64,000 nucleotides of DNA from Octopus sinensis (GCF_006345805.1 NC_043002.1:52018001-52082000); one strand, 5' to 3'. Shown: positions 14,815-28,640, counted from the first letter of the stretch. The notes: a model not told the origin generated them from the sequence alone. Translations and numbers: made by a program.

Positions 14815-14935
14815 CTGTTGGTTTGTTGACTCCTAGAAAACCTTGGTCACCAAGTTTCTTGAACAGCTCATGAGCAGGGAAAAACTCTGCCTTCTCCCAT
14901 TCATCAACATAAGGGTTTATTTCTTTCTCAATGAA
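14815..14935 (-). CDS. Acyl-CoA dehydrogenase exon 2
   Basis: TAG acceptor, FIEKEINPYVDEWEKAEFFPAHELFKKLGDQGFLGVNKPT, GTAAGT donor. Typical ACAD N-terminal helical domain. Not in the ORF track; found by manual translation. Confidence 0.92.
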
Positions 14936-15651
14936 CTATATATAGAAAGGCAAAAATACATAAATAAAAATAATAAACAAATGATGTTGATGTCATAAGA
15001 ATTCATAAGCTGTGAGATAACATAAAATAATTCTTTTTTGAACACTGAAGCTTGAAGCAGACAAAGCCATAAATGACAGCTTGTAAATAGTAGTTTCAAA
15101 TTTTGGCACAAAGCCAGCAATTTGGGGGGAGGGGTGAAGTCGATTACATCAACCTTAGTGCTAAACTGGTACTTAATTTATTGACCCAGAAACAATGAAA
15201 GGCAAAATCAAGCATGTGGGAATTTAAATTCAGGATGTAAAGGCTGATGAAATTCCACTAAGAATTTTACCTGGCATGCTAATGATTCTGCCAGTTTGCT
15301 GCCTTATAGCTTGTAAATATTAGGCTAAAAACCCTTTAGAAAGAAAAAATTAAAGTCTGCCAGTGGGAAATGAAACTACATCTTCTGTAAACATGACAGG
15401 CCATTCTACCACTGGACCAAAGCAACACTCAGTTTCTCTATTCATTTTTAAAACTTTATTCTTACTAGTGAGAATTGTAAATTGTTGACCCAATATTTAC
15501 ATGCTATTATTTATAGCTTCTTTAGCTTCAAATTTCATTGTTCCAAAATTATAAATGAATGAATTTAAACAGTTTTTATGTCAGTTTTTCTGTTATTGAA
15601 TTTTACAAATAATGAAATTTGTGTGACTTGTTTCCAAGGCTTATAAATTAT

Positions 15652-16005
15652 CATCATCGTTTAACATCCGTTTACCATGCTAGCATGGGCTGAACGGTTC
15701 GACAGGGGTCTAGGAAGCCAGGAGGCTGCACCAGGCTCCAGTCTGATCTGGTAGTGTTTCTACAGCTGGATGTCCTTCCTAACGCCAACCACTCCGTGAG
15801 TGTAGTGGGTGTTTTTTACATGCCACCGGCACAGGTGCCAGGGGAGGCTGGCAATGGCCACGATCGGTTGGTGGTTTTTACGTGCCACCTACACAGAAGC
15901 CAGTCAAGGCGGCGCTGGCATCGGCCACATACAGATGGTGCTTTTTACATGCCACCGGCACAGGTGCCAGGTTAGGCTGGCAATGGCCACGAACGGTTGG
16001 TGAAT
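15652..16005 (-). mobile_element. Short RTE 3'-tail copy (others at 2470-2585, 6020-6260, 28814-28875, 28991-29250, 49705-50045, 51955-52195, 59635-59940, 60260-60440)
   Basis: Matches the RTE 3' end (GGTTGGCGTTAGGAAGG.CATCCAGCTGTAGAAAC...CATGCTAGCATGG...GTTAAACGATGATGAT). Confidence 0.85.
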
Positions 16006-17177
16006 GTTAACAAATTTTCTTCATTTTGTTGTGTCTAGGCAGAGTCATTATACCAATATTAATAACACACACACACTGATTCAGTTCCACTCCTTTATTA
16101 TTAATCAATTGGTTAAATATCTAACCAATTAACTAATTGATCAATTAACTTCATGGTCACACAATCAGTCATTAATTTTGATTTCCCTTTTATTCCTCAA
16201 AGTTCTTTTGCTGCCATTTGCAATCTTTTCAGTGACTTCTTTCTCAGTCCATTATGGAGGCTATATTTGTCTATCTGAAACTTTGTCACATGTGTATATG
16301 TGTGTGTTTATATATATAGGTGCAGGCATGGGTGTGTGGTAAGTAACTTGCATATCAACCACATGGTTCCAGGTTCAGTCCCACTGCATGGTACCTTGAG
16401 CAAGTGTCCTCTACAAAAGCCTTGGGCTGACCAAAGCCCTGTGAGTGAATTTGATAGATGGAAACTGAAAGCAGCCCATCGTATATGTGTGTGTGTGCGT
16501 AAATATATGTTTGTGTGTCTGTGTTTGTCCCCGTAATCTAGCAGTTCAGCAAAAGTATATACATATATATATACGACAGGCTTCTTTCAGTTTCTGTCCA
16601 CCAAATCCACCCACAAGGCTTTGGTCGACCCGAGGCTATATAAAATAATGAAATTATTGTATACAGTGCTCAGGTGCATTATTGTGATTATCTGCTTGCA
16701 TATGTATGTTTGTGTGTTGTTGTGTATGCGTCTTCTTGTGTCCGTTTTTACCTCTTAAAGTCAATCTCTCAATCATGACATCTTTCATATTTTATCTTTT
16801 CTTTGTTTCAATCATTGGACTGTGGCCATGTTGGGGCACTGCCTTCAAGTGTTTAGCTGAAGAAATCAACTCCAGTACTTATTTCTAAGTCTGGTACATA
16901 TTCTATCAGTGTCTTTTGCCAAACCACTAAGTTACAGTGATGTCAAGTGATGAAGTTAATAAACACAGACTCATACATGCATGCACATATGTCCATCACT
17001 CCTAAATGGGATTAAAGGTGACTTATCTCACTGGTCCACGACTTTCAGATGTTTTAACACTATGTGTTTTGAGAGAGTGTTCTCCACCTGGCAAAATCAC
17101 AGCCCACCATCAAATACCCAAGGCAGTTACATTAAGTATATGTGGCTAATAATGTTCATATATATATATATATATAT

Positions 17178-18019
17178 TTTATATATAGAGGGCATTATAC
17201 ATACATGCCAGAGGGCATTATACATACATGCCAGAGGGCATTATACATACATGCCACACGCTAAGAGGGACAATTAGTCATTTCTACCAAAAATATTACT
17301 AATCCCACCGAATGCAATTTTTCAAAGTAAGACATTTAAAAAATATAGACCTGTATCACAGTGATTTCATACTTACGTATTCATCAGCAGGCCTGAATGT
17401 ATCATAAATAAACGACCCTGTCCCGCTTAAGCCGATCAGCTAACTGATCAACATCAACGAAGCACATGGGTGAGTTTACATATATTACATCCTGTAAATG
17501 GCATACTTTTACGAATTGCATTTCGGGAAAGGAAAAGTTTTTTCGGAATAAAAATTTAGCAATTAAGGACAACTATAATAAGGAAAACTTAACAAGAATT
17601 GTCAGGTAGATAGCGTGAAAACCTCATAAGAGAAAAAATTTCGAAAATATTATTTCTTATTGAACATATTAATTTATATATAGAGGGCATTATACATACA
17701 TGCCAGAGGGCATTTTACATACATGCCACACGCTAAGAGGGACAATTAGTCATTTCTACCAAAAATATTACTAATCCCACCGAATGCAATTTTTCAAAGT
17801 AAGACATTTAAAAAATATAGACCTGTATCACAGTGATTTCATACTACGTATGTATAATGCCCTCTATATATAAATTAATATGTTCAATAAGAAATAATTA
17901 TTTTCGAAATTTTTCTCTTATGAGGTTTTCACGCTATCTACCTGACAATTTCTTGTTAAGTTTTCCTTATTAAGTAGTTGTCCTTAATTGCTAAATTTTT
18001 ATTCCGAAAAAAAACTTTT
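17178..18019 (-). mobile_element. Hammerhead-bearing tandem unit (retrozyme/Penelope-derived-like) with terminal inversion
   Basis: 17178-17380 repeats at 17673-17851 (472 nt between equivalent cleavage positions). 17848-18019 is an inverted copy of 17533-17699. Internal 23-nt minisatellite. (TA)n on both sides. Confidence 0.6.
17347..17394 (-). ncRNA. Type-I hammerhead ribozyme (complete core)
   Basis: Minus strand reads AGGCCUG-CUGAUGA-AUAC-GUAA-GUAU-GAAA-UCACUGUGA-UA^CAGGUCU. 7-bp stem I (one G-U), 4-bp stem II with GNRA loop, quasi-palindromic stem III, AUA cleavage triplet. Confidence 0.85.
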
Positions 18020-18052
18020 ATATATATATATGTATGTATATATATATGTATG

Positions 18053-18086
<34 letters not shown>

Positions 18087-18102
18087 ATATATATTATATA
18101 TA

Positions 18103-18136
<34 letters not shown>

Positions 18137-18356
18137 ATATATATATACGTATATGGATGACCAGATATTGATTGATTTTCGTTGCTTTCCTCTCTGCCTG
18201 GGTGGATTGTTTTCAAGTATTTTGGTTTCTCTGGGAGTCCCTTTTTAAAGTAGAAGAATAGCTAAGGTTTGGGCTGCTATTTCTAAACTTCGGTATATGG
18301 TAAAGCAAATCTTTGCTGAACCCTAATTATTAAGTATATATATATATATATATGTA

Positions 18357-18391
<35 letters not shown>

Positions 18392-18406
18392 ATATATATA
18401 TGTATG

Positions 18407-18443
<37 letters not shown>

Positions 18444-18623
18444 TATATATAGATATATATATATATGTATGTGTATATATGTGTATAACAAACTTTGGTT
18501 GTAGAAAACAACAAATTTAATGTCATCCCTTAACATATCACATCTCGAACATTTAATCACATATAAAGAAACATCTTGTACATAGAATAGAATATATATA
18601 TATATAGATATATATATATATAT

Positions 18624-18860
18624 ATGGAAAAAAGTCAAGGTAGAAAATGCTAAAATGATTTTATAAAAAACATTTCAGCACCGGCTTCAGTCATTGTGAC
18701 TTTTTCATCTGTAAGTCTGGAAATCAAACTTTTCGTTTAATTTTTCCAAAATTTAATTGTTTTCCATACTTACAGTTGAAAAAATTTCAATGACTGAAAC
18801 CAGTACTAGAATGTTTTGTATAAAATTATTTTAGCATTTTCTACCTTGACTTTTTTCCAT
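18624..18860. mobile_element. (TA)n-embedded fold-back (palindromic) element
   Basis: ATGGAAAAAAGTCAAGGTAGAAAATGCTAAAA... is mirrored as an imperfect inverted repeat of about 100 bp per arm. Confidence 0.7.
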
Positions 18861-19134
18861 GTATATATATCAACTCGTATGTTCCTTTTCAACCTTATAT
18901 ATATATATATATATATAATATATATATATTATATATAAAGGGAAAGATTACGAAAATAAACAAAAGATGAAGGCAGGTGGAGTACAAACAAACAAATGTT
19001 TAGTATAGCGCTCCGGAATAGAAAAGTCTTTTACTTTTCGAGCCTATGCTCTTTGACAGAAAGATACGCAAAAAAAACAGGAAAGAAAAAAAATGCGTGT
19101 AGGAGCTAAGGAACTATCATGGCGTCCTGACCAT

Positions 19135-19172
19135 GTGTATATATATATGTATTTTGTGTGTGTGTGGGTGTT

Positions 19173-19214
<42 letters not shown>

Positions 19215-20012
19215 ATATAGATATATATAATGCATGTTTAATATATATATATATATTATATATATGTAATATATATAAATATATAAATATATATATATAT
19301 CTGTGTGTATATATATATATATATAATTTATATATATATATATATGTATGTATATATATATTATATATATATAAATTTATATATATATATATGTATGAAA
19401 TGTATATATATATATATATGAAATTTATATATATATATATGTATGTATGTATATATATGTATGTATGTATATAATATATATATGCATGTTTATCTATATA
19501 TATATAATAATATATGTATATATATGTAAGTATATATAAATTATAATATATATTTCTGTGTGTATATGATATATATATATATATAAATTTATATATATAT
19601 AATTGTATGTATATATATAGTATATTATATATAAATTTATATATATATATATTTGTAATGTATATATTATATATATATAAATATTTATATATATATATAT
19701 ATTGTATGTATATATATATATATGCATATATATATATTATGCATTATATAATATATATATATATGCATATATATATGTATATATATATATATATGCATAT
19801 ATATATATGCATATATATATATATATATAATATGCATATATATATGTATATATATATATATGCATATATAATATATGCATATATATATATATATGCATAT
19901 ATATATATGCAGTATATATATGTAGTATATATATATGCATATATATATATATATATATATCTATTATAATATATATATATATGCATATATATATGTATGT
20001 ATATATATATGC

Positions 20013-20086
<74 letters not shown>

Positions 20087-20200
20087 GTATATATATATAT
20101 ATATATAATATATTATATGTATATATATATATATATAATATATAATATATATATATATATCTATATATATTGTATATATATATATGTATATATATATATA
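19135..20200. repeat. ~1.07-kb degenerate (TA)n/(TATG)n microsatellite (others e.g. 18020-18150, 29245-29400, 29925-30385)
   Basis: Direct inspection. This explains the spurious YI-rich ORFs. Confidence 0.98.
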
Positions 20201-20500
20201 ACGGGAAGCTTTATGAAAATAGACAAAAGACGAAGGCAGTGAAAACAAACGAACAATTGTATTAGTATGGCGCTCAGGAAATATAAATAAAACAAGTCTT
20301 TAACGTTTCAAGCCTACGCCTCTTCAACAAAAGATACACAGAGAGAAAAAAAACACAGAAAGAAGGAGAGAAAAAAATGCGTGCAGTAACTAACGAATCA
20401 ACATGGCGATCTGATTTCGGCCAGAGGTCAAAGATCAAACATGAGACGCGAGAGCGAAATAAGGGGAGATAATAGGTTGATAATAGGGTTGAAGGACAGC
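20200..20500 (-). mobile_element. Penelope-like terminal-repeat fragment family in (TA)n (other copies at 18935-19135 and 30385-30625)
   Basis: The three copies share GGGAAG..TTATGAAAATA.ACAAAAGACGAAGGCAG...ACGTTTCGAGCCTACGCTCTTC, each starting directly from a TA tract. The Penelope assignment is inferred from the hammerhead-like motif. Confidence 0.5.
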
Positions 20501-20830
20501 TATAGTGCGTAGGAGGGGTCTGGACGTGTGTATAGGGTTGGTGTATGTATTAGTATGTATTAGTATGTATAAGGTGTGTGTTTGTTGTGTGTATGAGAGA
20601 GTATTAGTGCGTAGGATTGGTCTGGACGTGCGTATGTATGGGGTTGGTGTATGTATTGTATGTATTAGTATGTATTAGTACGTATTAGTATGTATAAGTG
20701 TGTGTGTGTTGTATGAGAGAGTATAAGTGCGTATAGGGGGTCCTGGACGTGTGTATGTATAGTGTTGGTGTATGTATTATTAGTATTAGTACTTATTAGT
20801 AATTAGTTGGTGTATGTATTAGTATGGCAC
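20500..20830 (+). repeat. ~110-120-bp minisatellite, about 3 copies
   Basis: GTGCGTAGG...CTGGACGTG.GTAT...GGTTGGTGTATGTATTAGTATG...GAGAGAGTAT is repeated. Confidence 0.8.
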
Positions 20831-20869
20831 ATCATATATGATGTGATGTGTGAAGTCGTGTGGTGTAGT

Positions 20870-21150
20870 GAGGAGAAGAGGGGGAGGGGGAGAAGAGGGG
20901 GAGAAGGAGGGTGAGGAGAGGGGGGAGAGAGGAGAGGAGGGGGAGAAGGAAGGGGGGGGGGGGGAGGAAGGAGGAAAGAGGGAGGAGGGGAGAGAGAAGG
21001 GGAGTGAGGGAGCAGAGGGAAGGGGAAGAGGGAAGGAGGGAGGGAGAAAGAGGGAAGAAGGGAAGGGGGGTAGGGGTGAAGGATGAAGGACTGAAGAAGT
21101 AGGGGTTGGGGGAACGATAGGTGAGGGGGGTTAGATGAGGAGGGGGGGGA
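20870..21150 (+). repeat. G/A-rich polypurine tract
   Basis: About 280 nt almost entirely G/A with many GGG-GGGG runs. Confidence 0.9.
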
Positions 21151-21733
21151 GAGTTGAGACCAGTTGACAAATGGCGTATAAGAGCGAAGAGAGAAGATTA
21201 ATTCATATATATAATGTAATATGTATATATATATATGTATATATATATGTATATGTATATGTGTATATATATATATATATATTATATATATATATATATA
21301 TATATGCATATATATGTATATATATACATCTCTTTTACTCTTTTACTTGTTTCAGTCATTTGACTGTGGCCATGTTGGAGCACCGTCTTTAGTCAAGCAA
21401 ATCGATCCTAGGACTCACTCCCTGTAAGCCTAACACCTATTCTATCAGTCTCTTTTGCCGAACCGCTAAGCATCGGTTGCCAAACAGAGACAAACAGAGA
21501 CACACAAACACACACAGACACATGCATATATATATACATATATACGACGGGCTTCTTTCAGTTTCCATCCACCAAATCCACCCACAAGGCCTTGGTCAGC
21601 CCGAGACTATAGTAGAAGACACCTGCCCAAGGTTCCACGCAGTGGACTGAACCCAGAACCATGTGGCCGGCAATCAAGCCACCCACCACACAGCCAATGT
21701 AGTTCTCATGGAGATTTAGTGTGACACAAAATA

Positions 21734-21792
<59 letters not shown>

Positions 21793-22523
21793 GTAAAAAT
21801 AATTACAGACATGGACAAGAACATGAAACACCAAAGAGACGACACAAGAACCACAGGACGGGACATTCGAAGCCCTCAGTCATCAGTCAAGAACCAGATC
21901 ATCTTCGCAATTTCGGCTGAATTAATCTTGAGATTGCTCCGATCTGGGCAGCCCCCCAAGGGAAATCTAAGCCAAGCGCATTAGATCCCCTGGAAGAAAG
22001 CTTCGAATGTATACAACACACGAGGACGGAAAACGAACGAAGTACACGAACAAAAATACAGAATACTGACACCAATAAGAATACAAAAGCGTAAAAACAA
22101 TAACGGTAAAGATAAAAAACAAAACAAACCAGGACGTAGGACAAGGGTCTTTCGACAGGACGAGTTGAGTTTGGGGCTGGCTTATGAAGTTGTGCCTAAT
22201 GGCCGCAGGGAGACGAACAAATATGTGTTGTGCTTCGCGACTGCTGGAACGAAAAGGGCGCTCAGCAGTGGCTAGCGGTCACGTGAGAACAAAAGACAAG
22301 AAAAGGGCAGATGAAAAGAGAGAGAAGGTGGACTCGGGAGGAGAAGAAAGAGACAGATCGAGGGGACTGGAGGTGAGAGAGATAGAGAAACTTAGAAGGG
22401 GGGAGTATATATATATATATATGTAGGTCCCGGTTGATTCGGGGTTAACCACAGTAAATAAGTACTCAATACATAGCAGAGTAAAATTAATTTATTATAT
22501 AGAAGCTCCTTCTATATATAATA

Positions 22524-22571
<48 letters not shown>

Positions 22572-22837
22572 ACCGACCAGACCATCAGATGTTTTTACAC
22601 ATCGCTGTCAAAACGTTCGCATTGTTTTAGCCTTTGAATGACGCCAACAGAAGAGAGTGGTGAAAGAGTACACAGACAGGGATCACACCCCACACCTGCC
22701 GGGGTATCGTGGAGCTTTTAGGTGTTTTCGCTCAATAAACACTCACAACGCCCGGTTCTCGCGGTCGTAGGATCGCGAGTCCGCTGCCCTAACCACTGGC
22801 CATTGCACCTCCACATACATATATATATATTATATAT

Positions 22838-22927
<90 letters not shown>

Positions 22928-24752
22928 TGTGTGTGTGTGTATGCTAATGATTCTGCTAGCTTGCTGCCTTATGATATTTTTGTCATAATATCTGATACAT
23001 AAAATATTTTATCCTTGAACATTTTTAGCCTCTTATTCCAGATTAAACTGACACCCAAATATTAACATATCCATATTGCTAGATAGTAACAGATTTGTTT
23101 TTATACTACAAAAGAAAAGATAACAGAAAATAGTCCATGTCCTACATTTTGACCCTCTTTATGTTATCACATATCAGATTGTCATTTATCAAGTAACCGG
23201 TCATTTTGCTCTTTGTATCGCTAGTTGTAGCACTTTTGGTGTTCATATCATGATATCATGCCACCTAGTAGGAATTGAAAAGTCTCGTCTTAGCCTCTTC
23301 GTGATAAAGTCTACTAATATGGCTTATGGTGATATAAAAGAATAATCATGTTATTTGAAATTCTGCAGCCAAAAGACAATGTAATTGTTGTGTGTGTGTG
23401 TGTGTGTGTACATTCTTTTATTTGTTTCAGTCATTTGACTGCAGCCGCCTTTAGTCAAGCAAAATCGACCCCAGAACTTATTCTTTGTAAGCCTAGTACT
23501 TATTCTATCGGTCTAGTTTGCCGAACCGCTAAGTTACAGGGACATAAGCACACCAGCATCGGTTGTCAAGCGATGTTGCGGGGGGGGGGGGGGCAAACAC
23601 AAACACACAAACAAAAGACGAGATAAATAATATAGATGCACAGGGCGATCTTTCGCTTTAAGAATAGTTGTATGCCAAGGGGCGTGTCTGTCTGTGTGTG
23701 TGTATATGAATGGTAGAAATCTACAAATGCAGAAAATCACAAAACAGAGAAAATAAAATATGGACGACTTGTTCTGAAACACCCCCGAGTGGGGAACGGT
23801 CCTCAAAAATAACCCCCAGTTGTTTTTCCCCAAACTTCCTATGTTCTCGGAATCTACATAGTCCGAGGTATATTTGTAGAGAATTTCATTTAAAAAAATC
23901 CATTTTCATGAAAGTTATACACACATACACACACAATGGGGTTCTTTCAGTTTCCGTCTACCAAATCCTCTCACAAGGCTTTGGTCAGCCTGAAGCTATA
24001 GTAGGGGACACTTGCCCAAAGTACCTTGCAGTGGGACTGATCCTAGAACCATGTGGCTGGGAAGCAAGCTTCTTACCACACAGTCACACCCGCACCTAGC
24101 CACGCCTGCGTCTAGCCACGCCTGCGCCTACAATTTTTTTTCTTCTGTTGAGTTGATTTATCAATTAGATTACCGGTACACAGTCCTTTACCCGAGAATT
24201 TAAAATGCGGAAGACCCCAAATCCGAACATTTTGGTATAAATACGGTGGTCAGCTGAGGGACAGACAAGAGAAAGGTCTACGACACAGACAAGGGTTTAG
24301 TAGACCGCAGAGACCGTGTGTGTGTGTGTGTGTAAACACACACACACACAAATATATCCATTTCTGACATATCACTTCCACAGATGTATCCTGTTTCTAT
24401 TTCTAGCAACTAGTAGCAGTTGTAAACATATGCATGCAGTGAAGAATTATGTGTACCAACGACAAATTAAGTCCAGTGAATAAATTATTGTAACTAGATG
24501 TCATTCATTTGTTTACTTCAAAGGCATCCACATTCCTATCGCATCAGTTCACCAGATTCACATTTTACCACTACACACCGTCAGCTGTCCCCAGTACGAG
24601 CACACCTATAGATCTGGGGCAGAGGCAAAGGGTGCTCGAAACAACCGATTCTCAGTCGATTCTGTAATGTGCATTCGATAAGATTTAGTAAGTACGTAAT
24701 AGAGTAAACAGGATGATAACAACAAGCACACCATCAAAAATAAACAACTTAC

Positions 24753-24923
24753 CTTGTTTAAAGAATCTCGGATTTGTTTATGATCGTCCGTATAAAGTTC
24801 CACGGCGGCCAGAGAAGATTGTCTCCGGATAAATGCCCTACTTTTAAACAGCCGAGAAACAGAAAAGGAAAGACCCTTTCTTTCACTTACTAACAAGGCT
24901 TTTTTAACTAAGTTCAAAAACAT
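24753..24923 (-). CDS. Acyl-CoA dehydrogenase (LCAD/acdh-6-like), exon 1 with mitochondrial-targeting-like N-terminus
   Basis: ATG at 24923. 57 codons MFLNLVKK...RRQSS...LYTDDHKQIRDSLNK, then GTAAGT donor. Basic/hydroxylated leader. Phase 0 joins exon 2. Confidence 0.85.
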
Positions 24924-25279: not shown

Positions 25280-25306
25280 TGAGAGAGAGAGAGAGACAGA
25301 GAGGAG

Positions 25307-25370
<64 letters not shown>

Positions 25371-25404
25371 AAGAGAGAGAGAGATGAGAGAGAGAGAGTG
25401 GGAG

Positions 25405-25445
<41 letters not shown>
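25280..25445. repeat. (GA)n microsatellite upstream of the acyl-CoA dehydrogenase start; partner tract at 28646-28690
   Basis: Direct inspection. Confidence 0.97.
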
Positions 25446-28400
25446 TAGTTTCTTTATTCACATAAGGTTGAGAAAAGAGGGGACAAAACAAACGTTGGGG
25501 TCAGGGTATCGAATGAGAGACGAAACATGAATAAACAAACAATAAAATATATACAATTAATGAGATGAGTGATTAACAAAAAATAAAGCGGAGGACGCGG
25601 CGACCCCAAAAACCACATACTCACACTGAAGACTTGCTTTATCCTTTTTTACATTCTCGATTAAACAGGTTCTTTCACTCGCAACATACTTGCTATAGAC
25701 TTCCATCTTTTACGAACACACTTTGCGACAGGCATTTCTTCCCAGCCTTATTTCCGTTTCATGTGGAAAACGAAAAAGTCGATTAGCTCGAGACTGGAGA
25801 TAAACATGCCTGTTGCAATTCCTTTTACTCTCGTCTTCCACACTACTTCTTTCGCCATAGCAACTACCGAAAGAAAACAGGCTCGCTCCTCCCTATTCAG
25901 GAAGGTCGGCGGAACGATCTTAATTACAGATTCGCTCGACAGTTGTACTCTTCTCGAATGCGACAGCAGGTGTTCGACATAAGTCCAGAGTTTAGTCACC
26001 TTGGGCATTGCACAATCGCGTGCAGGACAGTTTCACTGTCCCTCTTACATCTTGCACAAACCGGCGAAGGTGCACACCCATGTCTAAAGAGCTTATCTCG
26101 AACCGGTAAAGCTCCTCTGTAACATTGCCAGGCCAGGGACTTTTGGTAATTATCCATAGGCCCCGACCGAATGTTCTTTGGAACAGGCTGGCCAGTTGAT
26201 TTTCGTCGAAGCCCAGAGTTTCTCCTAGTACGTCGTCACACTTAAACTCTACTAACCCTCTATAGAAGAAAGCGGTAGTAGCCCCGACACCGGCGTTGCC
26301 CGACTGGGAGAGAAGCACGAGTGCCTGATAGCACTCTGCATGCCACATGCCCAACCTCGGTCTACACTTGATCCATGGGTTCAGTTCGTTAAACGAATGT
26401 GAACTGTGGAAATAACAGCTTGACAAAGGAGACCACACCTGCTCACCGTCCAGGTAAATCCAGAGTGTCTAAGCCTGAGCGCATGTTCTGCGCATTTTTA
26501 GCCACGGCATCCCTAACCCACCGTTCAGCGGCTTTTGGCAGCAAATAGAGCGCCTTACAAGAGGTCTGCTGCCCCTCCACAAAAAGCGAAAGAGCATGCG
26601 TTCCAGTTGTTCAGCCACGAATCGGGGCAAGGCACTACGGTTAGGCGGTAAGTGATTACAGAGGCGATAAACACTTCTGCAACCTCCGCCCTCCCTTTCA
26701 AGGACAGTTTCCGCTCAGACCATGTCTGAGTTAGGAGAGCCACCTTTCTCGCCACCTCGCTCCAGTTCTTCTCTATCTGGAGATCTGGACCTAACCAGAT
26801 CCCAAGCATTTTCACCGGTCCTTCCGTCCAACGTCCTACGACGCTGTCGGAAGACATCGACTTGCCCCTCCAGGTGCCGAGTTGCAAGCCGACCGATTTA
26901 TCCCGGTTGACTTTCGCTCCTGCCACCGCTTCGTAGTCCCTTAAGGTCTCACCCACCCGCTGTAGGTGCTCGACTCGGGAAATAATGACGGTGATGTCGT
27001 CCGCATACGCCGAAGCTGACTTTCCGCACCCTAGATCTCATAGTTTCCAACCTCCTCAGCAACGGCTCGAGGGCCAAAACGTAGAGAAGCGGGGAGAGAG
27101 GACACCCTTGACGTCCGAACGTTCAATGCTGAACGGTTCCGAAAGGAAACCATTTACCCGAACTACCGATTCGATGTTGCTGTATAAAGCGATGATCCAT
27201 CCGCGGAAGGTCGGGCCGAAGCCAGCCGCCGCGAGGACCGCCTCCAGATACTGATGGTCCACCCTATCAAACGCTTTCGATTGGTCCAAGTGGACCATAG
27301 CCCCACCCTTGCCAGGAATCCTATTTACCCTTTCTAAGGCATAGCGTAGAAAGTGGAGATTGTCGTGGATGGTCCTTCCAGGGATGGCGCAAGTTTGCGC
27401 CTCGCCAACAAGTTCACCACGACCCTCGCCAACCTTTTGCTGCTGAGACCTTGGCTAAGATCTTCAACTCTGCGTTAAGCAGAGTGATAGGCCGGAAATT
27501 ATCAATTAAATCCCCCTTGTTTGGGTCCTTTCTTAACAGCGCTACCACCCTCGGCTCACAGACTTAGGAATTCTCCCGTTCTGCTGCCAGTTGGTGTACA
27601 CGCATGCAAGTAGGTGCCCAAACAAGTCTGGCATGCTACTATAGAGTTCGTAAGGCAAACCAATCGAGTCCGGCGATTTGTCCCCGCCGCAGTCTGCCAA
27701 CATATCCTCGACTTCTTTGGCTGTGATCGGCGCCTCACAGATTCCGCGTCCAGCTCGATAGACGCGGCGAACGGCTAGGAAGTCTGCGAGCTTCTCCCCG
27801 CGCTCCAGCCCGCCGCTCCTCCCCGCCGCTCCTCCCGAATAGCTGGGCGAAATGATCATGAAACACCTTGCACATCTCCTCGGTTTCGTTTACTAATCGA
27901 CCATTTGGGCCCGTCAGGATCGAATGGTTGAGTTGTTGCCACGCTGGCCCTCTACACCCGGGCCCATCCGGCTGCGTTGATCCCTTCCTGTCTCATTGCA
28001 CGGATCTTAGCCCTGACATGCACCCTTCATGTTTAGTTTTGAGATGTTGGTCTAGTGCTAACCTCGCCGCTAACACTTTCGATGCACTGCCTGACCTCAT
28101 TGCCTCCTCTATTGCCTTAACTAGTTCCTTTTCTACTTTGTTTCTAGCACTAGCTAGTTCTTTGCTAACCTAATTGACTCAAATTTGATGGCTCTTTTCA
28201 GGGCGTACCACCATTTATTGTTGATAATGGATCCGGTTAACGCCCTCATTACTAATTGTTTAATCCGATTCCTGTAGGCTTCACAATCCAATAGTGACTT
28301 GTTTAGCTTCCAATAGCCGGTACCGGTAATCGTCTACACATGCTATCTATGTCGAGCGTACAGGTCACTAATTTGTGATCGCTGTAGCTGACGATACGGT

Positions 28401-28640
28401 GTTGTGGACAGCTAAGTATTTTCTTATCTTTCCTTCTAGTTATGATTCTATCGATATAAGATCTGGACGACCCGTCGTTTCTTGCCCAGGTCCACGCTGG
28501 AGTGTCTGGATGGTCCAGTCTGAATCTATCTGCCAATTCGAAACGACTTAGCATATCGTTGAGGTGAGGTAATCCCCTCGTATTCTTTCTTGAGCCAACA
28601 TAATCTCCTTGCATCGCAAATTATGTTGAAGTCACCTAGC

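What the first reader, a model, noticed from the sequence alone, without database searches (positions are those of the whole stretch)
17347..17394. Complete hammerhead ribozyme in the sense strand of acyl-CoA dehydrogenase intron 1
Seen: the minus strand reads AGGCCUG CUGAUGA AUAC GUAA GUAU GAAA UCAC U GUGA U A^ CAGGUCU. All invariant core nucleotides are present, with a 7-bp stem I, a GNRA-capped stem II (A-U rather than G-C at 10.1-11.1) and an AUA triplet. Predicted cleavage is between 17354 and 17353. The gene is on the minus strand, so the motif is in the pre-mRNA (intron 14936-24752). Established: intronic self-cleaving ribozymes exist in animals (CPEB3 HDV-like, amniote HH9/HH10). Inference: it could cut nascent transcript and compete with splicing of this ~9.8-kb intron.
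Basis: partly seen in the sequence, partly recalled or inferred. Interest (0 to 1): 0.8.

Follow-up and report, generated by a model that had tools for sequence, protein, structure and literature searches.

The report
Transposon-borne hammerhead motif in octopus intron
A textbook-looking hammerhead ribozyme motif really is in the sense strand of intron 1 of an Octopus sinensis acyl-CoA dehydrogenase gene, but it sits in a small repeat insertion that sister species lack at this site, so it is most likely a mobile-element ribozyme, not a conserved gene regulator.

Summary
The motif is real and at the stated coordinates (minus strand 17394-17347). All invariant core bases are present, and the predicted cleavage is between 17354 and 17353. 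The host gene and intron (24752-14936) are as stated; the window is Octopus sinensis 'probable acyl-CoA dehydrogenase 6'.

Three corrections apply:
- Stem III as drawn has an impossible 1-nt loop. It is really 4 bp plus a triloop (-0.2 kcal/mol), or a near-palindrome suited to a double hammerhead.
- Pair 10.1-11.1 is A-U, not the conserved G-C.
- Rfam scores it far below threshold (HH9, 17.6 bits against 52).

A motif this good is expected about 1.4e-4 times per window, but about 6 times per 2.7-Gb genome.

The motif lies in an AT-rich, non-coding composite repeat of about 860 bp (18027-17170). The repeat holds 1.4 tandem copies of a 472-nt unit, a 175-nt inverted arm and (TA)n on both sides. 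This is the insertion pattern described for Penelope-like elements and animal retrozymes. The repeat is absent from the orthologous site in O. vulgaris and from the O. bimaculoides intron.

Best reading: a hammerhead carried by a retrozyme-like or PLE-derived element, probably weak as a monomer. I found no evidence that it regulates the host gene. It is a new member of a known kind.

The parts
17347..17394 (-). Complete type I hammerhead motif. Stem I 5' strand 17394-17388; CUGAUGA 17387-17381; stem II with GUAA loop 17380-17369; GAA 17368-17366; helix III near-palindrome AUCACUGUGAU 17365-17355; A17 17354; stem I 3' strand 17353-17347. Predicted cleavage 17354|17353.
17819..17851 (-). Upstream half-copy of the hammerhead: stem II (one A missing from loop 2), GAAA, helix III, A17 (17826) and stem I 3' strand (17825-17819). 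It has no CUGAUGA and no stem I 5' strand. Second potential cleavage site 17826|17825, exactly 472 nt upstream of the first.
17210..17380 (-). Direct repeat, downstream copy (segment A: 3' part of the hammerhead plus about 143 nt). 98.8% identical to 17682-17851.
   Evidence: (D16)
17682..17851 (-). Direct repeat, upstream copy (segment A').
   Evidence: (D16)
17533..17699 (-). Segment B, the right arm of the long inverted repeat.
   Evidence: (I9)
17848..18027 (-). Inverted copy of segment B (left arm, 96% complementary). It joins the half-hammerhead at the microhomology ATAC. With the right arm it would form a dsRNA hairpin of about 185 bp in the pre-mRNA.
17395..17532 (-). Segment C, single-copy in the data reachable here, leading into the complete hammerhead. 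Together with A and B it completes the 472-nt unit (17825->17354).
17187..17256 (.). 23-nt tandem unit AGAGGGCATTATACATACATGCC, three copies here and two at 17682-17728, at the A/B border.
17170..17204 (-). First 35 nt of segment B after the last A copy. This is either a 3'-truncated next unit or the 30-40 bp 'tail' described for PLE insertions.
18019..18147 (.). (TA)n microsatellite flanking the composite on its 5' side (minus-strand sense). A shorter TA run (about 17155-17186) flanks the 3' side.
24753..24923 (-). Exon 1 coding part of the host gene (probable acyl-CoA dehydrogenase 6). The intron 1 donor GT is at 24752-24751.
14815..14935 (-). Exon 2 of the host gene. The intron 1 acceptor AG is at 14937-14936. 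The hammerhead cleavage site lies 2,418 nt upstream of this exon.

Best explanation
The motif is the hammerhead of a small, non-coding, AT-rich retroelement of the animal 'non-LTR retrozyme' or Penelope-like-element-derived kind. The element inserted into a (TA)n microsatellite inside intron 1 of the Octopus sinensis ACAD6-like gene.

The insertion holds about 1.4 head-to-tail copies of a 472-nt unit, preceded by an inverted partial copy. Its sense orientation relative to the host gene is incidental.

In such elements the hammerhead cuts multimeric transcripts into unit-length RNAs with 5'-OH and 2',3'-cyclic phosphate ends. These RNAs can be circularised by a tRNA ligase and copied back into DNA by a PLE reverse transcriptase.

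Helix III is weak as a hairpin but is a near-palindrome, so this ribozyme is built to work as a double hammerhead between neighbouring copies. At this locus there is one complete copy and one 3' half-copy. The complete catalytic core can therefore pair either with its own 3' strand (cut at 17354|17353) or with the half-copy 472 nt upstream (cut at 17826|17825). Cutting is probably slow, and its effect on the host mRNA small.

Shown: the motif, the repeat anatomy, absence from the orthologous sites, and the fold energetics. Inferred: retro-mobility, self-cleavage, the dimer mode, and the lack of any host function.
For: - The core is complete and three helices are present. Chance expectation is 1.4e-4 per window for this quality.
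- Helix III AUCACUGUGAU is a 5+1+5 near-palindrome. The hairpin is worth -0.2 kcal/mol and the duplex -12.1. Two copies fold into the classical double hammerhead at -31.1, against 2 x -12.1 for two monomers. Palindromic 15.2-16.2/loop 3 and dimeric action are published hallmarks of metazoan type I and PLE hammerheads (PMC4209133; PMC7229834).
- Repeat anatomy: a 171-nt direct repeat (98.8%) spaced 472 nt apart, a 173-nt inverted repeat (96%), a 35-nt extra piece at the 3' end, and (TA)n on both sides. Craig et al. 2021 describe PLE insertions as partial tandems with an adjacent inverted 5'-truncated copy and a 30-40 bp tail. They also report a microsatellite bias, including (TA)n (PMC8557442).
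- The unit resembles published retrozymes. It is 472 nt with 33% GC and no ORF longer than 56 aa. Published ranges are 150-450 bp with GC below 45% and 51-972 bp.
- The composite is absent at the orthologous site of O. vulgaris. Flanks align at 95.9% up to window 17189 and again from 18389, and between them O. vulgaris has other sequence plus (TA)n. It is also absent from the O. bimaculoides intron.
- Divergence between the internal duplicates (1.2-4%) is no greater than the 4-5% between the two species' introns. This fits an insertion around or after the species split (inference).
- A diverged second family member exists in another intron of the O. bimaculoides orthologue. It has its own short inverted 5' arm and a TA-rich 3' end. 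Its direct part begins at unit position 1, the nucleotide just 3' of the cleavage site, give or take about 10 nt.
- The MFE of the 541-nt transcript pairs the complete core with the upstream half-copy's helix III and stem I strands.
Against: - Only one complete hammerhead was found. The single other family copy reachable lacks the C plus hammerhead part, so I could not show that the ribozyme belongs to the family consensus, nor find covariation.
- About 6 equally good motifs are expected by chance in a genome of this size.
- A10.1-U11.1 replaces the 'highly conserved' G10.1-C11.1 pair.
- Helix I is 7 bp rather than the canonical 6, with no recognisable loop 1.
- Rfam scores are far below gathering thresholds, and Hammerhead_1 gives no hit at all.
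- No PLE reverse transcriptase or GIY-YIG gene is in the window. The nearby RT belongs to an APE-type LINE.
- The O. vulgaris site is not a clean empty site, so loss there cannot be excluded.
- The long terminal inverted repeat could equally mark a foldback or MITE-like DNA element.
Confidence: 0.6

Rival explanations
1. Chance motif. The 48-nt sequence only happens to satisfy the hammerhead descriptor inside an AT-rich, hairpin-rich repeat, which may be a foldback or MITE-like DNA element with about 175-bp inverted arms inserted at TA. It has never served as a ribozyme.
For: - About 6 motifs of equal helix quality, and about 30 with at least 15 bp in total, are expected by chance in a 2.7-Gb genome on both strands.
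- A-U sits at the conserved 10.1-11.1 position.
- Stems II and III are weak (-0.8 and -0.2 kcal/mol).
- The MFE sequesters the core.
- Rfam Hammerhead_1 gives no hit and HH9 only 17.6 bits.
- The only other family copy lacks this segment.
- The long inverted repeat forms a near-perfect hairpin of about 185 bp, as foldback elements do.
Against: - Per-window expectation is only 1.4e-4.
- Several features not required by the descriptor fit natural metazoan hammerheads: the palindromic helix III that gives a stable double hammerhead, a C1.1-G2.1 pair, and a unit-length spacing of the two cleavage sites inside a partial tandem.
- The 5' end of the O. bimaculoides copy lies at the cleavage position.
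- The tandem, inverted copy, tail and (TA)n pattern is the published signature of elements known to carry hammerheads.
Confidence: 0.3
2. Host-exapted intronic ribozyme. The hammerhead cuts the nascent ACAD6 pre-mRNA and tunes expression by competing with splicing of the 9.8-kb intron, as proposed for CPEB3 and the amniote HH9/HH10.
For: - The motif is in sense orientation inside the intron, 7.4 kb from the donor and 2.4 kb from the acceptor.
- Intronic ribozymes can lower mRNA output if they cleave fast enough (PMC10919898).
- Amniote intronic hammerheads are thought to derive from retroelement hammerheads (PMC6155905).
Against: - The motif is not conserved. It is absent from the orthologous intron of O. 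vulgaris (about 95% identical flanks) and of O. bimaculoides, and Argonauta shares only the exon.
- It is embedded in a repeat insertion that is probably young.
- The predicted monomer is weak, and slow ribozymes did not affect splicing in the published test.
- In Xenopus about 43% of retrozyme copies are intronic, so an intronic position needs no special explanation.
Confidence: 0.05
3. Assembly artefact. The tandem and inverted structure, or the core itself, is a mis-assembly of repeat reads in the single available O. sinensis assembly.
For: PLE-type tandem and inverted insertions are known to cause assembly problems (PMC8557442). Only one assembly of this species was reachable.
Against: The structure is internally coherent, with flanks that align cleanly to O. 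vulgaris. The duplicated parts differ by point changes and by the copy number of the 23-nt unit, which collapsed or chimeric repeats would not show.
Confidence: 0.05

Closest known systems
Metazoan non-LTR retrozymes (type I hammerheads in short tandem repeats; Cervera & de la Pena 2020, PMC7229834; Li et al. 2026 preprint)
   Same: Type I topology, a low-GC non-coding unit of a few hundred nt, a head-to-tail arrangement with cleavage sites one unit apart, and a weak palindromic helix III implying dimeric action. A mollusc precedent exists (mussel).
   Different: There are only 1.4 units and one complete ribozyme. An inverted arm is attached. 10.1-11.1 is A-U, helix I is 7 bp, and loop 2 is a GNRA tetraloop without a recognisable loop 1 partner. 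Copy number and circRNA expression are unknown.
Hammerheads in pseudo-LTRs of Penelope-like elements (Cervera & de la Pena 2014, PMC4209133; Craig et al. 2021, PMC8557442)
   Same: A partial tandem with an adjacent inverted 5'-truncated copy and a piece resembling the 30-40 bp tail, inserted in a microsatellite. The hammerhead has a palindromic helix III and is expected to act as a dimer.
   Different: There is no RT/GIY-YIG ORF in or near the element. PLE min-HHRs typically have a longer helix II (6-8 bp) with a bulged base after A9, a conserved G10.1-C11.1 pair and almost no helix III. Here helix II is 4 bp and helix III is 4-5 bp.
Newt satellite 2 and Schistosoma Sm-alpha hammerheads (double-hammerhead mode, Forster 1988; reviewed in PMC6155905)
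   Same: These are genomic repeat-borne type I hammerheads in which a single copy is poor and two copies form an extended helix III.
   Different: Those occur in long arrays or a SINE family with thousands of copies and have demonstrated cleavage. Here there is one locus and no activity data.
Amniote intronic hammerheads HH9/HH10 (RECK, CTCL, DTNB) and the CPEB3 HDV-like ribozyme
   Same: A self-cleaving motif in the sense strand of an intron of a protein-coding gene. Rfam's best, sub-threshold match is HH9.
   Different: Those are conserved at orthologous positions across classes of vertebrates and have a canonical 6-bp helix I with loop 1 and a closing stem. This motif is species-specific, transposon-embedded and scores 17.6 bits against a threshold of 52.
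Discontinuous hammerhead of rodent Clec2 3' UTRs (Martick et al. 2008; reviewed in PMC6155905)
   Same: If the complete core pairs with the half-copy 472 nt upstream, as in the predicted MFE, enzyme and substrate strands are separated by hundreds of nucleotides.
   Different: In Clec2 the insertion is in helix I of a type III motif and is conserved. Here the long-range form is only a thermodynamic prediction, arising from a partial duplication.

Membership tests
Hammerhead ribozyme (type I) | Invariant core: C3 U4 G5 A6 N7 G8 A9, G12 A13 A14, A15.1-U16.1, H17 not G | tested here: met
   Read directly from the sequence. The own descriptor finds it once. Rfam HH9 aligns the core column by column.
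Hammerhead ribozyme (type I) | Three helices around the core, with helix I open | tested here: met
   Helix I is 7 bp and helix II is 4 bp plus GUAA (-0.8 kcal/mol). Helix III is 4 bp plus a triloop (-0.2 kcal/mol), not 5 bp plus a 1-nt loop as written. The hammerhead fold is -9.7 against an MFE of -12.1.
Hammerhead ribozyme (type I) | Highly conserved G10.1-C11.1 pair | tested here: not met
   A10.1-U11.1. The pair is called highly conserved in PMC4209133. Natural compensatory variants are reported in cave-cricket repeats.
Hammerhead ribozyme (type I) | Loop 1-loop 2 tertiary contact needed for activity at cellular Mg2+ | tested here: inconclusive
   Loop 2 is GUAA. Beyond the 7-bp helix I there is only a U-rich asymmetric internal loop and a possible ACAUU/AAUGU closing stem. 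No canonical loop 1 was recognised.
Hammerhead ribozyme (type I) | Score at or above the gathering threshold of an Rfam hammerhead model | tested here: not met
   There were 0 hits at gathering and no hammerhead hit at E<=10 on 251 nt. HH9 scores 17.6 bits against 52 on 71 nt.
Hammerhead ribozyme (type I) | Mg2+-dependent self-cleavage 3' of H17 | not testable with these tools
   Needs in vitro transcription or end mapping.
Metazoan non-LTR retrozyme | Head-to-tail repeats of a non-coding, low-GC unit of a few hundred nt, each with a type I hammerhead | tested here: inconclusive
   The unit is 472 nt with 33% GC and no ORF over 56 aa. Only 1.4 units are present, with one complete and one half ribozyme, plus an inverted arm.
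Metazoan non-LTR retrozyme | Multi-copy family whose members keep the ribozyme | tested here: inconclusive
   One further diverged copy was found (O. bimaculoides L002 11945-12262), without the ribozyme part. None was found in 68 kb of O. vulgaris. No whole-genome search was possible.
Metazoan non-LTR retrozyme | Unit-length linear and circular RNAs in tissues | not testable with these tools
   No transcriptome data were reachable.
Penelope-like element (autonomous) | ORF with a telomerase-like RT and a GIY-YIG endonuclease | tested here: not met
   There is no long ORF in the composite. The 56-aa ORF has no homologue. The neighbouring RT is a LINE with an APE-type endonuclease.
Penelope-like element (insertion signature, including non-autonomous derivatives) | Partial tandem (pseudo-LTR), adjacent inverted 5'-truncated copy, 30-40 bp tail, microsatellite target | tested here: met
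   set against the description in PMC8557442. The linear ends of the unit remain unresolved.
Exapted intronic ribozymes (HH9/HH10, CPEB3-like) | Conservation at the orthologous intron position across species | tested here: not met
   The motif is absent in O. vulgaris and O. bimaculoides. Argonauta shares only exon 2.

The most novel reading that the evidence does not exclude
The locus is a working retrozyme source that uses the host gene for its transcription. The ACAD6 pre-mRNA carries the complete hammerhead and the upstream half-site, and cleavage at 17826|17825 and 17354|17353 releases exactly one 472-nt unit. That unit is then circularised and can seed new insertions.

As a side effect, this species-specific insertion would cut a fraction of nascent ACAD6 transcripts in O. 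sinensis but not in O. vulgaris. It would be a recently arisen intronic ribozyme caught before fixation or exaptation, in a lineage where no genomic hammerhead has been described in the literature I could search.
Probability: 0.12. Interest if true: 0.6.

Novelty: new member of a known kind. Interest (0 to 1): 0.3.

Why it matters
If genuine, this extends the retrozyme or PLE-type hammerhead repertoire to cephalopods. It also gives a dated example, present in O. sinensis and absent in O. vulgaris, of a ribozyme-bearing element landing in the sense strand of an intron. That is the presumed first step towards the conserved intronic hammerheads of amniotes.

The pairing of a complete core with a half-copy one unit upstream is a natural test case for long-range (discontinuous) hammerhead formation. 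It does not bear on acyl-CoA dehydrogenase biology unless cleavage proves fast.

If it is a chance motif, it is a useful warning. A perfect core plus three helices is expected a handful of times per large AT-rich genome.

Tried and rejected
- Rfam at gathering score on the whole window found nothing. The weak snoRNA and sRNA hits on the slices (TtnuCD18, snoZ267, snR75, psRNA6, Bacillaceae-1) are chance matches far below threshold.
- I tried to collect family copies through predicted proteins. The 56-aa ORF of the unit found no homologue.
- A search with the neighbouring LINE RT, meant to fetch more Octopus DNA, returned no Octopus proteins.
- An exact-pattern scan for the hammerhead found 0 hits in metagenome and viral contigs.
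- A 19-nt element pattern gave 9 metagenome hits. They have no further similarity and are chance matches.
- Widening the O. bimaculoides and O. vulgaris loci to 10-kb flanks added no copy.
- A relaxed hammerhead descriptor found no second motif in 426 kb, both strands.
- Reading the element as an autonomous PLE was rejected because it has no RT/EN ORF.
- Reading the nearby RT as the element's partner was rejected because it is an APE-type LINE.
- I considered whether the upstream junction (inverted 23-nt unit plus half hammerhead) is ancestral, because it aligns loosely with the O. bimaculoides copy. The 22-nt stretch in between is too weakly similar to decide.

Full report
**Observation**

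The minus strand of the window from 17394 to 17347 reads AGGCCUG-CUGAUGA-AUAC-GUAA-GUAU-GAA-AUCACUGUGAU-A|CAGGUCU. Every invariant hammerhead position is present: C3-A9, G12-A14, the A15.1-U16.1 pair and H17=A. Helix I is 7 bp with one G-U. Helix II is 4 bp closed by a GUAA tetraloop. The topology is type I, with helix I open.

Two details need correcting. 'UCAC U GUGA' cannot close on a single-nucleotide loop, so as a hairpin helix III is A-U, U-A, C-G, A-U plus a CUG triloop, worth only -0.2 kcal/mol.

**Host gene**

Stop-to-stop translation of the minus strand shows acyl-CoA dehydrogenase exons. A protein search gives 100% identity to Octopus sinensis XP_029638277.1, 'probable acyl-CoA dehydrogenase 6'. 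The locus maps to chromosome CM016864.1 of GCA_006345805.1. Exon 1 ends at 24753 (AAG|gtaagt) and exon 2 starts at 14935 (tatag|TTC). Intron 1 is therefore 24752-14936 and the motif is in the pre-mRNA sense, as stated.

**Is it more than chance?**

I wrote a simple descriptor: CUGANGA, GAAA, U-H, helix I of at least 4 bp, helix II of at least 3 and helix III of at least 2.
- In 4.72 Gb of random sequence at the window's GC content it finds 739 hits, or 0.02 per window on both strands.
- Of these, 28 have at least 15 helix pairs in total.
- Only 5 are as good as the observed motif in all three helices. A smaller first-order Markov simulation gave no hit as good as the observed one in 40 Mb.

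That is 1.4e-4 per window but about 6 per 2.7-Gb genome. The motif is striking for one window, yet one motif alone does not prove a ribozyme in a genome this large.

Rfam is unenthusiastic. Nothing reaches a gathering score. No hammerhead model hits at E<=10 on 251 nt. Only Hammerhead_HH9 appears, at 17.6 bits against 52, when a 71-nt slice is searched. Its core columns do align exactly.

The hammerhead fold (-9.7 kcal/mol) is not the predicted MFE (-12.1). The MFE pairs the core's UGAU with AUCA of helix III. Nearest-neighbour models do not see the tertiary core, so this is a caution rather than a refutation.

**Surroundings**

The motif is not in unique intron sequence. All positions below are read on the minus strand.
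- A 171-nt stretch (17380->17210), beginning in helix II, recurs 472 nt upstream (17851->17682) at 98.8% identity.
- The upstream copy holds only the 3' half of the ribozyme: helix II with one A missing from loop 2, GAAA, helix III, A17 at 17826 and the stem I 3' strand.
- That upstream copy is joined, at the microhomology ATAC, to an inverted copy (18027->17848) of the segment that follows it (17699->17533). The two arms are 96% complementary over 173 nt.
- After the downstream copy come three 23-nt repeats, the first 35 nt of the next unit, and then (TA)n. Another (TA)n run lies at the other end.

The composite (about 18027-17170) is therefore an inverted arm, then a 5'-truncated unit, then a nearly complete 472-nt unit. 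It has 31-33% GC and no ORF longer than 56 aa.

Craig et al. 2021 describe insertions of Penelope-like elements this way: partial tandems forming pseudo-LTRs, often an adjacent inverted 5'-truncated copy, a 30-40 bp tail, and a microsatellite bias that includes (TA)n (PMC8557442). Hammerheads normally sit in those pseudo-LTRs.

The unit also matches published animal non-LTR retrozymes in size, GC content and lack of coding capacity. These are tandem units of 150-450 bp with type I hammerheads (PMC7229834). A 2026 preprint argues they are non-autonomous PLE derivatives.

**Helix III and the dimer mode**

AUCACUGUGAU is a 5+1+5 near-palindrome. Between two copies it forms a duplex of -12.1 kcal/mol. 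Two copies of the 48-mer fold into the classical double hammerhead at -31.1 kcal/mol, against -24.2 for two monomers. A weak, palindromic helix III with dimeric action is the published hallmark of metazoan type I and PLE hammerheads, and my descriptor did not require it.

At this locus the second copy is only a half. In the MFE of the native 541-nt transcript, the complete core pairs with the upstream half-copy's helix III and stem I strands. That would aim the core at 17826|17825 rather than at its own site. Cuts at both sites would release exactly one 472-nt unit. This is a thermodynamic prediction only.

**Comparative test**

I fetched the orthologous loci of O. bimaculoides, O. vulgaris and Argonauta hians.
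- In O. vulgaris the intron aligns at 95-96% up to window position 17189, the 3' edge of the composite, and again from 18389. Between these points O. vulgaris has other repeats and (TA)n. It has nothing related to the element or the hammerhead.
- The O. bimaculoides intron is much shorter and lacks the region.
- Argonauta shares only the exon.

The motif is therefore not conserved at its site. The internal duplicates differ by 1.2-4%, no more than the 4-5% between the two species' introns. This fits an insertion around or after the split (inference). The O. vulgaris site is not a clean empty site, so loss there is not formally excluded.

One other member of the repeat family turned up, in a different intron of the O. 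bimaculoides gene (L002 11945-12262, about 74% identity to segments A and B). It has its own short inverted 5' arm and a TA-rich 3' end, and it lacks the ribozyme part. Its direct part starts at unit position 1, the first nucleotide 3' of the cleavage site, give or take about 10 nt. That is what a copy made from a self-cleaved RNA would look like, but it is a single observation.

**What could not be done**

No tool reached whole Octopus genomes or transcriptomes.
- An attempt to pull family copies through predicted ORFs found nothing.
- A search with the neighbouring LINE RT returned no Octopus proteins to use for fetching more Octopus DNA.
- An exact-pattern scan for the hammerhead in metagenome and viral contigs found nothing. 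A 19-nt element pattern gave only chance hits in metagenome contigs.
- Wider flanks of the O. bimaculoides and O. vulgaris loci added no copy.

I therefore cannot say whether the C plus hammerhead segment belongs to the family consensus, and I have no covariation evidence.

**Verdict**

The most likely reading (about 0.6) is a genuine but probably feeble hammerhead. It would be carried by a retrozyme-like or PLE-derived non-autonomous element that landed in a (TA)n tract of this intron in the O. sinensis lineage.

A chance motif inside a foldback-type repeat remains a serious rival (about 0.3). The reasons are the A-U at 10.1-11.1, the weak helices, the low Rfam scores and the genome-wide chance expectation.

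Site conservation, which defines HH9/HH10 and CPEB3, fails. About 43% of Xenopus retrozyme copies are intronic anyway. Published work found that only fast intronic ribozymes disturb splicing (Fong et al. 2009 via PMC10919898), whereas this one is predicted to be slow and lies 2.4 kb from the acceptor.

This is a new member of a known kind. I found no paper describing a hammerhead in an octopus genome, so it is a modest taxonomic extension if confirmed.

Noticed in passing
window 17533-17699 and 17848-18027: In the pre-mRNA the two inverted arms would form a near-perfect dsRNA hairpin of about 185 bp (-265 kcal/mol), with the half-hammerhead in its loop. This is a plausible ADAR editing substrate in a cephalopod.
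   Followed up: partly
L002 11945-12262 (O. bimaculoides, a downstream intron of the same gene): A diverged copy (about 74%) of segments A and B of the same repeat family, with a 40-nt inverted 5' arm. Its direct part begins at the position corresponding to the hammerhead cleavage site (about +/-10 nt). It abuts a SINE with an (ATG)n tail on the left.
   Followed up: partly
window 25992-28614, minus strand: A degraded non-LTR retrotransposon (APE-type endonuclease and reverse transcriptase ORF fragments with frameshifts), about 1 kb upstream of the start codon in ACAD6 exon 1. Its closest relatives are only 40-56% identical, including an Argonauta hians protein.
   Followed up: partly
window 16790-16931, 21334-21470, 23409-23533: Three copies of a SINE-like repeat (tttgtttcagtcatttgactgtggccatg...) in intron 1, with further copies in the O. 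vulgaris and O. bimaculoides loci.
   Followed up: no
window 18614-18727 and 18757-18870: A second foldback in intron 1 (114-nt arms, 88% complementary, 29-nt spacer). Unlike the hammerhead element, it is shared with O. vulgaris (L003 23020-23544, 86%).
   Followed up: no
L003/L015 (O. vulgaris) gene model against window 24753-24923: The O. vulgaris protein model CAI9724453.1 (439 aa) has a different N-terminus from the 425-aa O. sinensis and O. bimaculoides models. Its gene range is 48 kb with a far-upstream first exon. This may be an alternative first exon or an annotation difference.
   Followed up: no
window 19175-20200, 20868-21083, 25281-25445: Intron 1 holds about 1 kb of degenerate (TA)n and a purine-rich GGA/GAG block. 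A 165-bp (GA)n tract lies about 360 bp upstream of the start codon.
   Followed up: no
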